Virus record (IMG/VR): IMGVR_UViG_3300028177_000001
Span: 186,001-250,000 of that record
DNA length: 64,000 nt
Strand: one strand, 5' to 3'
Both the position numbers and the translations under genes were made by a program. Each line of letters opens with the position of its first letter. Positions within the stretch are counted from its first letter, which is position 1. The notes beneath the pieces were generated by a model. The model searched no databases. It saw only the letters and a list, made by a program, of their open reading frames with translations, and was not told where the DNA came from. This document shows, piece by piece, positions 59,930 to 60,011 of this stretch.

Positions 59930-60011
59930 TGGCACGCGGTGTAGGACTCGAACCTACGACCTTCCCACCCCCGAGAGGATGGGACGCTCTAACCAGCTGA
60001 GCTAATCGCGT
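59930..60011 (-). tRNA. tRNA-like gene with encoded CCA but no canonical anticodon loop
   Basis: Canonical D and T arms and variable loop AGGTC; anticodon arm TCCCA-TCCTCTCGGGGG-TGGGA (12-nt loop, or a 9-bp stem with a CTCG loop). Confidence 0.75.

What the first reader, a model, noticed from the sequence alone, without database searches (positions are those of the whole stretch)
59930..60011. CCA-ending tRNA whose anticodon loop is zipped into a stem
Seen: well-formed acceptor stem (6 of 7 bp), D arm, variable loop, T arm and genome-encoded CCA (not encoded by any other tRNA gene in the window). The anticodon loop is 12 nt (TCCTCTCGGGGG) and can extend the stem to 9 bp with a 4-nt CTCG loop. 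It cannot decode normally, yet every other tRNA feature is kept. Inference: a non-decoding tRNA (aminoacyl donor, EF-Tu or nuclease decoy, or uncharged signal).
Basis: partly seen in the sequence, partly recalled or inferred. Interest (0 to 1): 0.7.

Follow-up and report, generated by a model that had tools for sequence, protein, structure and literature searches.

The report
Phage tRNA with sealed anticodon arm
A marine jumbo phage carries an otherwise well-formed tRNA gene whose anticodon loop is replaced by a closed hairpin, so it cannot read codons; it is either a tRNA-shaped RNA with another job or a recently disabled tRNA, and the data cannot yet tell which.

Summary
Window 59930-60011 (minus strand) encodes an 82-nt tRNA (Rfam tRNA, 50.6 bits). 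Its cloverleaf and tertiary-contact bases are kept, it has G73 and an encoded CCA, and its 12-nt anticodon loop zips into a 9-bp helix capped by CUCG. Three independent marine metagenome assemblies carry the identical sequence, so it is not an assembly error.

The window belongs to a 288-kb tailed jumbo phage with at least 43 tRNA genes, 26 of which encode CCA. A second sealed tRNA lies outside the window. It has 8 bp plus a UUCG tetraloop and the full bacterial alanine identity set. Similar UUCG/CUCG-capped arms occur in unrelated phage contigs (8 of 18 versus 0 of 13 in a control).

Against an established function, the one orthologous locus recovered (same synteny and leader) holds a normal tRNA-Val(CAC). 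Three related phage tRNA arrays contain no sealed tRNA, and no transcript data exist.

Best reading (about 0.4): a lineage-specific tRNA-shaped RNA that does not decode and acts through its body and CCA end. Main rival (about 0.3): a recently disabled tRNA.

By-catch: the gene sits in a conserved cluster of odd tRNA-like genes, including about 147-nt species with giant variable regions.

The parts
59930..60011 (-). The 82-nt tRNA-like gene ('t5'): a full cloverleaf with G73 and encoded CCA (59932-59930).
   Evidence: ARAGORN; Rfam RF00005 at 50.6 bits; direct reading; identical in independent assemblies.
59963..59984 (-). Anticodon arm: the 5-bp base stem TCCCA/TGGGA plus the 12-nt loop, predicted to form a 9-bp helix.
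   Evidence: MFE and centroid of the whole RNA. Arm alone has dG -14.3 kcal/mol with pair probabilities 0.84-1.0.
59968..59979 (-). The 12-nt 'loop' TCCTCTCGGGGG: four extra pairs (U.G, C-G, C-G, U.G) around the tetraloop CUCG (59972-59975).
   Evidence: Direct reading. Two of the four pairs are G.U, so they pair in RNA but not in DNA. Chance of full zipping is 0.02-0.08. The 12-mer is unique in the genome.
60012..60050 (-). Conserved 5' leader ending in GAGCCTACAAGC (60027-60016), 4 nt before the mature 5' end.
   Evidence: About 85% identical to the leader of the G003 tRNA-Val(CAC) locus. The 12-mer recurs at least 9 times on this strand of the genome, against about 0.6 expected.
60056..60080 (-). 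GC-rich hairpin CCTGCCCGAGC-CCC-GCTCGGGCAGG followed by ACCCCTTTCT, lying between the upstream tRNA-like gene and the t5 leader. It could be a terminator or a processing hairpin.
   Evidence: Direct reading. The consensus terminator scan did not call it.
60085..60231 (-). Upstream neighbour: a 147-nt tRNA-like gene. It has acceptor GGGGAAG/CTTCCCC, a 5-bp D stem, anticodon loop CTACGGA, a class-II-type variable hairpin, an extra roughly 55-nt hairpin element ending in CAGCTTACAAGC, and a T arm.
   Evidence: The MFE fold gives a cloverleaf with two extra hairpins (dG -63.6). The G003 orthologue keeps the structure with a different anticodon (TGG) and a different hairpin sequence.
59627..59773 (-). 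Downstream neighbour: a second 147-nt tRNA-like gene of the same family. It has a 6-bp D stem, loop CAGTTAA, G73, then CC followed by a T run.
   Evidence: G003 orthologue. It overlaps what looked like a 99-aa ORF that has no family hit.
58815..58890 (-). 't4': a tRNA-like gene (anticodon CAT) whose apparent 5' acceptor strand ACAAGCA is the end of the repeated CAGCCTACAAGC motif (58896-58885). Only 4 of 7 acceptor pairs form. A CCCCCTTCGGGGGG hairpin follows.
   Evidence: ARAGORN and Rfam at 35.9 bits; motif. The G003 counterpart has the same 5' end but anticodon CGT.

Best explanation
t5 is a lineage-specific derivative of an ordinary phage decoding tRNA. The same gene slot in a related phage holds tRNA-Val(CAC). 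In t5 the anticodon loop has been replaced by a helix extension capped with a CUCG tetraloop.

Shown:
- The rest of the molecule is an intact tRNA, including the stems, the elbow and tertiary-contact bases, G73 and CCA.
- The sealed arm is about as long as a normal anticodon arm, so the RNA keeps the L-shape but has a blunt tip.
- The sequence is reproducible across independent assemblies.
- The same genome holds a second such gene, t22, with a cUUCGg cap and a complete alanine identity set.
- Comparable capped arms recur in unrelated phages.

Inferred:
- It is transcribed from, or processed at, the conserved leader and matured like a tRNA (RNase P at the 5' end; the CCA is already present).
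- It cannot pair with codons, and it offers no loop to nucleases that cut the anticodon loop.
- t5 itself is probably poorly charged or not charged at all, because its acceptor is Trp-like and there is no anticodon. t22 should be charged by AlaRS.
- Its activity therefore resides in the tRNA body and 3' end.

Most likely role. It acts as a competitor or decoy for proteins that recognise tRNA by shape, T arm, acceptor stem or CCA. Examples are host tRNA-targeting defence or toxin nucleases, or tRNA-processing and repair enzymes. The phage is visibly invested in tRNA conflicts: it has at least 43 tRNA genes and a CCA-adding/HAD/2H 'Swiss-army-knife' RNA repair protein. The decoy step is a hypothesis, not a result.
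For: - Structure and body conservation.
- Not an artefact: for t5 and for t22.
- RNA-level selection: two of the four extension pairs are G.U, which argues for selection on the RNA and against a DNA palindrome-correction origin (direct reading).
- Second sealed tRNA in the genome: t22, genome 262564-262643(-) = L056:12564-12643, has arm CCTGA-CCC-UUCG-GGG-UUAGG (dG -14.1) and carries A73, G2-C71, G3.U70, G4-C69 and G20. The identity set is from PMC9976931. The joint chance of both loops zipping is about 1e-3 for random loops.
- Other phages: among expanded anticodon arms centred on YTCG in IMG/VR, 8 of 18 distinct arms have at least 3 nested pairs flanking the tetraloop, against 0 of 13 for the reversed core GCTY (Fisher P = 0.0096). 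Examples are L049 (9 bp + UUCG, a 12-nt loop, CCA), L041 (CUCG) and L044 (CUCG, G3.U70, CCA).
- Conserved locus: the locus and its leader are conserved in G003. 10 of 21 stem pairs differ on both sides yet stay paired and only one is broken, so the body shows no decay.
- Anticodon turnover: all four genes of the conserved cluster differ in anticodon between the two phages while keeping fold and acceptor features. This suggests the cluster is not constrained by a particular codon.
- tRNA-conflict context: the phage's repair protein (PolyA_pol + HAD_SAK_1 + 2_5_RNA_ligase2). Defences that cut anticodon loops or CCA tails by shape recognition are documented (PMC12851939; PMC10264068).
Against: - No orthologue with a sealed arm was found. 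The only orthologous locus has a normal 7-nt loop.
- Related arrays have no sealed tRNA: G003 with 19 tRNAs, G010 with 42 tRNAs plus a tmRNA, and LR745208.1 with 34 ARAGORN-called tRNAs in the two stretches scanned.
- A JGI metagenome scan for the same base stem with any loop of 7-14 nt returned only the source contig. The feature is therefore young or unique, and there is no covariation support for the extension.
- In an unbiased sample of expanded anticodon arms from IMG/VR, contiguous zipping was not enriched over shuffled loops (2 observed versus 1.6 expected, n = 32).
- No RNA run was listed as holding the sequence.
- The acceptor stem has an A6xC67 mismatch.
- No partner protein has been identified.
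- The decoy role is pure inference.
Confidence: 0.4

Rival explanations
1. t5 is a recently inactivated tRNA gene, a young pseudogene. A multi-nucleotide change in the anticodon loop of a former decoder knocked out decoding. Too little time has passed for the body to decay, and the closed hairpin is incidental.
For: - The orthologue has a normal loop.
- No sealed tRNA occurs in three related arrays, and there is no other copy in JGI metagenomes.
- The genome holds several other aberrant tRNA genes, which suggests rapid turnover.
- t5 has an A6xC67 mismatch.
- Zipping is not enriched in the unbiased sample of expanded arms.
- The loop is a pyrimidine run followed by a G run, which pairs almost automatically (shuffle P = 0.08).
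Against: - Two independent genes in one genome are both sealed by a stable YNCG-type tetraloop. The joint probability is about 1e-3 for random loops and about 1e-2 for composition-preserving shuffles.
- G.U pairs in the extension are not what DNA-templated hairpin correction gives.
- Every other stem and tertiary base is intact.
- Capped arms recur in unrelated phages but not with a control core.
Confidence: 0.3
2. t5 is a processing signal. The tRNA shape is kept only so that RNase P and RNase Z cut the polycistronic transcript of this gene cluster (tRNA punctuation). The anticodon is irrelevant and was closed to stop mis-decoding or to stabilise the fold.
For: t5 lies between other RNA genes and next to protein genes, outside the main tRNA array. 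A conserved leader motif sits at varied positions beside tRNA modules. tRNA-like punctuation is an established principle in mitochondria and for mascRNA (from my own knowledge).
Against: The flanking genes are themselves tRNA-shaped and would already supply cleavage sites. This does not explain t22, which lies inside the dense array between two normal tRNAs. There are no transcript data.
Confidence: 0.12
3. t5 still decodes. The extension breathes and the tRNA reads a codon with an enlarged loop. Possible forms are ARAGORN's CUC reading, an 8-nt loop on a 7-bp stem, or maturation by removal of a mini-insert.
For: ARAGORN proposes CTC with U33. The same genome has a tRNA-Met(CAT) with a 76-nt insert at the 3' side of the anticodon loop, so inserts in this region do occur. 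The phage encodes RNA-repair and ligation domains.
Against: - No contiguous 5-nt deletion of the 12-nt loop leaves a loop with U33 and a purine at position 37 (direct reading).
- The helix has pair probabilities of at least 0.84.
- A 7-bp stem would displace the anticodon.
- The body is not Glu-like, and the phage already has tRNA-Glu(CUC).
- There is no bulge-helix-bulge motif, and no Rfam intron or ribozyme hit.
Confidence: 0.06
4. t5 is an aminoacyl donor for a non-ribosomal reaction, or an EF-Tu sink.
For: t22 carries the full alanine identity set, and AlaRS does not read the anticodon. Non-decoding aminoacyl-tRNAs for cell-wall synthesis are known (from my own knowledge).
Against: For t5 itself the acceptor is Trp-like and the anticodon that TrpRS needs is gone. 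No FemAB, Leu/Phe-transferase, AlaRS or SmpB gene was found in the 79%-complete genome.
Confidence: 0.07

Closest known systems
Phage-encoded tRNAs with anticodon-loop substitutions that escape host anticodon nucleases (van den Berg et al. 2023, PMC10264068; T5 tRNA-Lys versus PARIS, PMC11464382)
   Same: Both are phage tRNA genes in large arrays, and in both the anticodon loop is the part that departs from the host-like consensus. The setting is a tRNA-cleavage arms race.
   Different: Those tRNAs keep a 7-nt loop and a working anticodon and act by replacing cleaved host tRNAs. t5 has no usable anticodon, so it cannot replenish decoding.
Anticodon-independent alanine acceptors: tRNA-Ala minihelices and the tRNA-like domain of tmRNA
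   Same: These are RNAs with a tRNA acceptor/T-arm module that work without an anticodon. t22, the sister gene of t5, has the same G3.U70, A73 and G20 determinants.
   Different: t5 lacks G3.U70. Both t5 and t22 keep a complete D arm and a full-length, though sealed, anticodon arm. Neither has an mRNA-like domain. ARAGORN found no tmRNA in this genome and no SmpB was found.
tRNAs with expanded (8-9-nt) anticodon loops, including frameshift suppressors and the many 9-nt-loop phage tRNA-likes seen
   Same: Extra nucleotides lie between positions 31 and 39 of an otherwise normal tRNA.
   Different: Those loops remain open. Here there are 5 extra nucleotides and the loop is consumed by four further base pairs.
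tRNA-like processing and mimic RNAs (mascRNA, viral 3' TLS, bacterial YrlA Y-RNA)
   Same: They use tRNA shape without decoding, and cellular tRNA enzymes recognise them.
   Different: Those are embedded in, or fused to, larger RNAs or have a different topology. No Rfam family other than tRNA matched here at E of 1 or below. t5 is a free-standing, canonical-length cloverleaf.
Non-proteinogenic tRNAs (for example the Staphylococcus tRNA-Gly species used for cell-wall synthesis, and Bacillus cereus tRNA-Other); cited from my own knowledge
   Same: These are dedicated tRNA genes kept for roles other than ribosomal decoding.
   Different: They retain normal anticodon loops and are charged. Their avoidance of the ribosome comes from T-arm or EF-Tu determinants, not from a sealed anticodon.

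Membership tests
Canonical elongator tRNA (Rfam RF00005) | Cloverleaf with acceptor, D, anticodon and T arms scoring above the family threshold | tested here: met
   50.6 bits against a gathering score of 29, with model positions 1-71 matched. ARAGORN also calls it.
Canonical elongator tRNA (Rfam RF00005) | 7-nt anticodon loop with U33, three free anticodon bases and a purine at position 37 | tested here: not met
   The loop region is 12 nt. Infernal treats it as an 11-nt insertion. It is predicted to pair into 4 extra bp around CUCG.
Canonical elongator tRNA (Rfam RF00005) | Conserved tertiary-interaction nucleotides (U8, A14, G18G19, R15:Y48, T54-Psi55-C56, A58) | tested here: met
   Direct reading of the sequence.
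Canonical elongator tRNA (Rfam RF00005) | Aminoacylation and use on the ribosome | not testable with these tools
   Only identity elements can be read. The acceptor is Trp-like (A1-U72, G3-C70, G5-C68, A9, G73), but the anticodon that bacterial TrpRS needs is absent.
tRNA pseudogene | Loss of constraint: broken stems, lost invariant bases, absence or decay in relatives | tested here: inconclusive
   The body is intact with only one mismatch (A6xC67), and 10 stem pairs are compensated relative to the orthologue. However, the sealed arm is absent from the orthologue and from all relatives.
Intron-containing tRNA (bacterial group I or archaeal bulge-helix-bulge) | An insert that can be removed to leave a standard 7-nt loop, with a ribozyme core or a BHB motif | tested here: not met
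   The insert is only 5 nt. No contiguous deletion restores U33 and R37. The helix has no bulges. No intron family was hit.
Expanded-loop (8-9-nt) frameshift-suppressor-type tRNA | An open loop of 8-9 nt on a 5-bp stem | tested here: not met
   The loop is 12 nt and is predicted closed, with pair probabilities of at least 0.84.
tmRNA or two-piece tmRNA tRNA-like domain | G3.U70 alanine acceptor, no anticodon arm, an mRNA-like tag reading frame, and an SmpB partner | tested here: not met
   t5 has G3-C70. ARAGORN run with -m finds no tmRNA in the genome. No SmpB was found.
Nuclease-evading phage tRNAs (anticodon-loop variants) | A functional anticodon retained, with substitutions at nuclease-recognition positions | tested here: not met
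   No free anticodon is available.
Sealed-anticodon, tetraloop-capped phage tRNA-likes (provisional class defined here) | A complete tRNA body with the anticodon arm extended to 8-9 bp and capped by UUCG or CUCG | tested here: met
   t5 and t22 in this genome. L035/39/46/51, L036, L041, L044, L048, L049 and L053 in IMG/VR.
Sealed-anticodon, tetraloop-capped phage tRNA-likes (provisional class defined here) | Evolutionary conservation of the sealed arm among orthologues (covariation) | tested here: not met
   No orthologue with a sealed arm was found for t5 or t22. The L035-type copies are identical to each other and so carry no information.

The most novel reading that the evidence does not exclude
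Jumbo phages encode a class of tRNA mimics that are deliberately disabled at the anticodon. The body is complete, the anticodon arm is sealed by a UUCG/CUCG-capped helix, and the CCA and, in some cases (t22), a full anticodon-independent charging identity are retained. These RNAs would serve as uncleavable decoys or sponges against host immunity that recognises tRNA by shape, acceptor stem or CCA tail. They would belong to a wider, fast-evolving phage toolkit of tRNA-like RNAs whose selection is uncoupled from codon reading. That toolkit includes the conserved four-gene cluster around t5, with its giant-variable-region, serine-identity tRNA-likes.
Probability: 0.15. Interest if true: 0.8.

Novelty: new variant of a known kind. 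Interest (0 to 1): 0.5.

Why it matters
tRNA has become a main battleground between bacteria and phages. Known defences cut anticodon loops, acceptor stems and CCA tails, and phage tRNA arrays are now read as countermeasures. All described viral countermeasures are decoding tRNAs or repair enzymes.

A tRNA that keeps everything except the ability to decode would point to a different tactic, such as mimicry or titration. It would also give an easily testable reagent, since these are 80-nt RNAs that can be expressed against defined defence nucleases.

If t5 is instead only a freshly broken gene, it still documents how fast tRNA genes turn over in jumbo-phage arrays. It also warns that automatic annotation is wrong for such genes: 'tRNA-Glu(ctc)' for t5 and 'tRNA-Arg(tcg)' for t22 are both forced readings.

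The neighbouring 147-nt tRNA-like genes with a shared inserted hairpin element may be the more unusual objects and deserve their own study.

Tried and rejected
- **Assembly error.** Rejected. Contigs from three studies match t5 exactly, and three runs cover t22 (two exactly; the third has one differing letter over 799 bases).
- **Cultured-phage homologues.** blastn against INPHARED gave only generic tRNA similarity, at most 79% identity to ordinary tRNA-Arg and similar genes.
- **Orthologue searches.**
  - dNK-anchored loci gave five relatives, of which only G003 has tRNAs there.
  - TerL-anchored relatives are array-less fragments.
  - An AlkB-anchored relative, G010, has 42 normal tRNAs.
  - LR745208.1 has none sealed.
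  - DNA patterns built on the t5 T arm and D arm were too generic or returned unrelated genes.
  - A metagenome scan returned only the source contig.
- **Cellular genomes.** The YTCG pattern in GTDB genomes gave mostly chance hits or partial tRNA hits, so it was uninformative.
- **Class-wide enrichment of zipping.** This was not seen among all expanded arms. It holds only for the UUCG/CUCG-centred subclass.
- **Expression.** No RNA run was listed as holding the stretch. Both read-laying runs went to checking DNA.
- **Promoter and terminator consensus scan.** Nothing useful.
- **Templated origin of the loop.** The 12-mer is unique in the genome. The t22 10-mer also occurs in the t4 terminator hairpin and twice elsewhere, which fits a genome rich in such hairpins but is not evidence of copying.
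- **Mini-intron reading.** Rejected on sequence grounds.
- **Phage partner enzymes.** FemAB, Leu/Phe-transferase, AlaRS and SmpB are absent. The RtcB hit is only a 45-residue N-terminal match.
- **Literature.** Three full-text searches found no description of sealed-anticodon phage tRNAs.

Full report
**What is there.** The minus strand of window 59930-60011 encodes an 82-nt RNA that both ARAGORN and Rfam's tRNA model recognise (50.6 bits). Read directly, it has the following parts:
- a 7-bp acceptor stem with one A6xC67 mismatch, then U8 and A9;
- a 4-bp D stem with an AGCUGGUUA loop, then G26;
- a 5-bp anticodon stem UCCCA/UGGGA;
- a 5-nt variable loop AGGUC;
- a 5-bp T stem with a UUCGAGU loop;
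- discriminator G73 and an encoded CCA.

Where a 7-nt anticodon loop should be there are 12 nt, UCCUCUCGGGGG. These continue the stem with U.G, C-G, C-G and U.G and leave a CUCG tetraloop. RNAfold puts this 9-bp helix in the MFE and centroid of the whole RNA. For the arm alone it gives -14.3 kcal/mol, with every pair at probability 0.84 or higher. A random 12-nt loop zips completely with P about 0.02, or 0.08 if the same letters are shuffled. ARAGORN's label 'tRNA-Glu(ctc)' is a forced fit.

**Not an artefact.** The window is bases 186001-250000 of a 288,255-bp IMG/VR virus record. Logan contigs from marine metagenomes of three different studies span the gene with no difference.

**What genome this is.** It is a tailed jumbo phage, with a large terminase, a portal, T4-type topoisomerase II and ribonucleotide reductase. 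Its G+C content is 62%. The nearest public relative is an uncultured 485-kb 'huge phage', LR745208.1, with 54% TerL identity.
- ARAGORN finds 43 tRNA genes, all on the minus strand and mostly in a 22-kb array just beyond the window. Infernal adds two more.
- 26 of the 43 encode CCA, so the encoded CCA of t5 is unremarkable.
- The phage also encodes a 919-aa protein combining a CCA-adding-type nucleotidyltransferase, a 'Swiss-army-knife' HAD domain and a 2H/LigT domain. This is a tRNA/RNA repair enzyme.

**A second sealed tRNA.** A gene I call t22 lies in the main array at genome 262564-262643, minus strand (L056:12564-12643). ARAGORN calls it 'tRNA-Arg(tcg)'.
- Its anticodon stem is CCUGA/UUAGG, with a 10-nt loop CCCUUCGGGG. 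That gives 8 bp capped by the classic cUUCGg tetraloop (-14.1 kcal/mol).
- Its acceptor end (pairs 1-5, A73 and CCA) is identical to that of the phage's tRNA-Ala(UGC), which lies 50 nt downstream.
- It carries the whole bacterial alanine identity set: A73, G2-C71, G3.U70, G4-C69 and G20 (identity table in PMC9976931). None of these lies in the anticodon, so t22 should still be alanylated.
- Its 5' 31 nt equal the phage tRNA-Val(GAC).
- It is covered by independent assemblies from three runs, two of them without any difference.

Two genes sealed in the same manner in one genome have a joint chance of about 1e-3 for random loops and about 1e-2 for composition-preserving shuffles. In t5, two of the four new pairs are G.U. 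These pairs exist in RNA but not in DNA, which argues against an origin by DNA hairpin 'correction'.

**Elsewhere.** I scanned IMG/VR for tRNA-type D and T arms separated by an over-long anticodon arm centred on YTCG. The scan returned 18 distinct arms, 13 of them behind a clear tRNA D arm, in phages of 34-69% G+C.
- Eight arms have 3-9 nested pairs flanking the tetraloop. L049 has 9 bp plus UUCG, a 12-nt loop and CCA. L041 has CUCG. L044 has CUCG, G3.U70 and CCA.
- The same scan with the reversed core GCTY gave 13 arms and none with 3 or more flanking pairs (Fisher P = 0.0096).
- Several sealed genes sit inside tRNA arrays, and some lie next to suppressor tRNA(CUA) genes.
- An unbiased sample of expanded arms (n = 32 with an intact base stem) showed no general excess of zipping. 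Sealed arms are therefore a subclass and not the rule.
- In cellular genomes the pattern mostly hit chance sequence or tRNA fragments.

**Homologues of t5.** No orthologue with a sealed arm exists in the collections I could search. Synteny gives one clear orthologous locus.

In the IMG/VR contig G003 (dNK 71% identical) the gene order matches that of the window: deaminase, dNK, a large tRNA-like gene, a tRNA, a second large tRNA-like gene, a t4-like gene, and a VWA protein. The 35-nt leader, the discriminator, the CCA and the trailer all align with t5 at about 85% identity.

That orthologue is a normal tRNA with loop UUCACAC, anticodon CAC. Comparing the two genes:
- 10 of 21 stem pairs differ on both sides yet remain paired;
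- two differ on one side and stay paired;
- one is broken, in t5.

The body of t5 therefore comes from a lineage under selection for the tRNA fold. The sealed loop, however, is specific to this phage lineage. Three related arrays contain no sealed tRNA: G003, G010 (42 tRNAs and a tmRNA) and LR745208.1.

**The neighbourhood is itself odd.** The leader motif (C/G)AGC(C/T)TACAAGC occurs at least nine times on the coding strand, against about 0.6 expected.
- In six places it ends a hairpin element of about 55 nt. That element lies between a class-II-type variable hairpin and the T arm of tRNA-like genes of 147-164 nt. These genes have acceptor GGGGAAG/CTTCCCC or close variants, long D stems and mostly G73, which are features of bacterial serine identity.
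- Two of these genes flank t5, at 60231-60085 and 59773-59627.
- In tRNA-Met(CAT), at genome 259507-259658, the same element forms a 76-nt insert at the 3' side of the anticodon loop.
- In t4 it abuts the D arm, which explains that gene's 4/7 'acceptor stem'.

G003 has the same family. In all four orthologous pairs of the cluster the anticodon differs: ACG versus UGG, sealed versus CAC, GUU versus AUU, and CAU versus CGU. Folds are kept, and the element hairpins differ in sequence but not in shape. This pattern suggests that selection on these RNAs is not tied to a particular codon.

**Interpretation.**
- Decoding by t5 is very unlikely.
- Charging of t5 is doubtful. Its acceptor half resembles the phage tRNA-Trp (A1-U72, C2-G71, G3-C70, G73), and bacterial TrpRS relies on the anticodon.
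- No phage gene for FemAB, Leu/Phe-transferase, AlaRS or SmpB was found. This weakens the aminoacyl-donor and rescue ideas.
- What remains is an RNA with the shape, T arm, acceptor stem and CCA of a tRNA, and a tip that cannot be read or cut.
- Bacterial defences are known to cut anticodon loops (PrrC, VapC, PARIS) and to recognise the T arm, acceptor and CCA regardless of the anticodon (Cas12a3; PMC12851939). The phage also invests in tRNA repair. I therefore favour a competitor or decoy role, at modest confidence. This step is inferred, not shown.
- The main rival is a young pseudogene. Smaller shares go to a pure processing signal, residual decoding, and aminoacyl donation.

**Verdict.** The case is a new variant of a known kind, namely non-decoding tRNA-like RNAs and phage tRNA countermeasures. 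Conservation and expression evidence are lacking, so its functional status is open.

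Noticed in passing
Outside the window: genome 262564-262643 (-), = L056:12564-12643: A second sealed tRNA ('t22'), with an 8-bp anticodon helix and a UUCG tetraloop. It carries the full bacterial alanine identity set (A73, G2-C71, G3.U70, G4-C69, G20) and an encoded CCA. ARAGORN mislabels it tRNA-Arg(tcg).
   Followed up: yes
Window 60085-60231 (-) and 59627-59773 (-); also genome 272155-272001, 271907-271744, 263469-263322 and 262404-262257 (-): A family of 147-164-nt tRNA-like genes. Each has a cloverleaf, a class-II variable hairpin and an extra conserved hairpin element of about 55 nt that ends in CAGCCTACAAGC just before the T arm. 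Acceptors are GGGGAAG/CTTCCCC or close variants, D stems are 5-7 bp in four copies (normal-length in the 271907 and 272155 copies), and most have G73 (serine-type identity). Their anticodon loops are diverse (ACG, GUU, CAA and 8-nt loops). Neither ARAGORN nor Rfam detects them. Orthologues in G003 keep the fold with other anticodons.
   Followed up: partly
Outside the window: genome 259507-259658 (-), = L056:9507-9658: A tRNA-Met(CAT) with an intact CUCAUAA loop followed by a 76-nt insert before the 3' strand of the anticodon stem. The insert belongs to the same repeated element family. No Rfam intron or ribozyme family matches it.
   Followed up: partly
Window 58815-58896 (-): In t4, the apparent 5' acceptor strand ACAAGCA is the end of the repeated motif, so only 4 of 7 acceptor pairs form. 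The G003 counterpart has the same 5' end, but its anticodon is CGU instead of CAU.
   Followed up: partly
L007:12003-12078 (G003 contig 17826-17901, minus): The orthologue of t5 is a tRNA with anticodon CAC (Val) that also carries G3.U70 and G73. That is an alanine determinant on a valine anticodon, so it is itself atypical.
   Followed up: no
Outside the window: genome 80229-82988 (-), = L292:229-2988: A 919-aa protein that fuses a CCA-adding-type nucleotidyltransferase (PolyA_pol plus its RNA-binding domain), a HAD_SAK_1 domain and a 2H/LigT domain. This is a 'Swiss-army-knife' RNA repair enzyme.
   Followed up: partly
Window 54009-54467 (-): A phage ORF with a ribosomal protein bL12 C-terminal domain (Pfam Ribosomal_L12, E 6.7e-9), about 5.5 kb from t5.
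   Followed up: no
Window 52982-53581 (-): A 200-aa open frame whose C-terminal 43 residues match the first 45 positions of the RtcB RNA ligase profile (28 bits). No remainder of RtcB was found next to it. It may be a fragment or an unrelated protein that shares an N-terminal motif.
   Followed up: partly
Outside the window: genome 20066-20142 (-): An isolated tRNA with CCA and an abnormal anticodon arm, either a 6-bp stem with a 6-nt loop GUUAUA or a 5-bp stem with an 8-nt loop. ARAGORN labels it '?(Stop|Ile)'.
   Followed up: no
Outside the window: genome 253559-253629 (-): A 71-nt tRNA-Cys(GCA)-like gene with a reduced D arm. ARAGORN misses it; Infernal finds it at 35.8 bits.
   Followed up: no
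L035, L039, L046, L051 and L036 (IMG/VR contigs, 34-38% G+C): Sealed, UUCG-capped tRNA-likes lie directly beside suppressor tRNA(CUA) genes in low-GC phage contigs. This may be worth checking in stop-codon-recoded phages.
   Followed up: no
IMG/VR loci (for example L185, L189, L218, L219, L240, L249): Many phage tRNA-like genes have 9-nt anticodon loops of related form, such as GACUAAGGU and AGUAAUGAC. They are an apparent recurrent type, distinct from the sealed arms.
   Followed up: no
Window 59115-59411 and 59416-59715 (-): These two 'ORFs' (98 and 99 aa) have no family hits. The second overlaps a tRNA-like RNA gene, so it is probably not protein-coding.
   Followed up: partly
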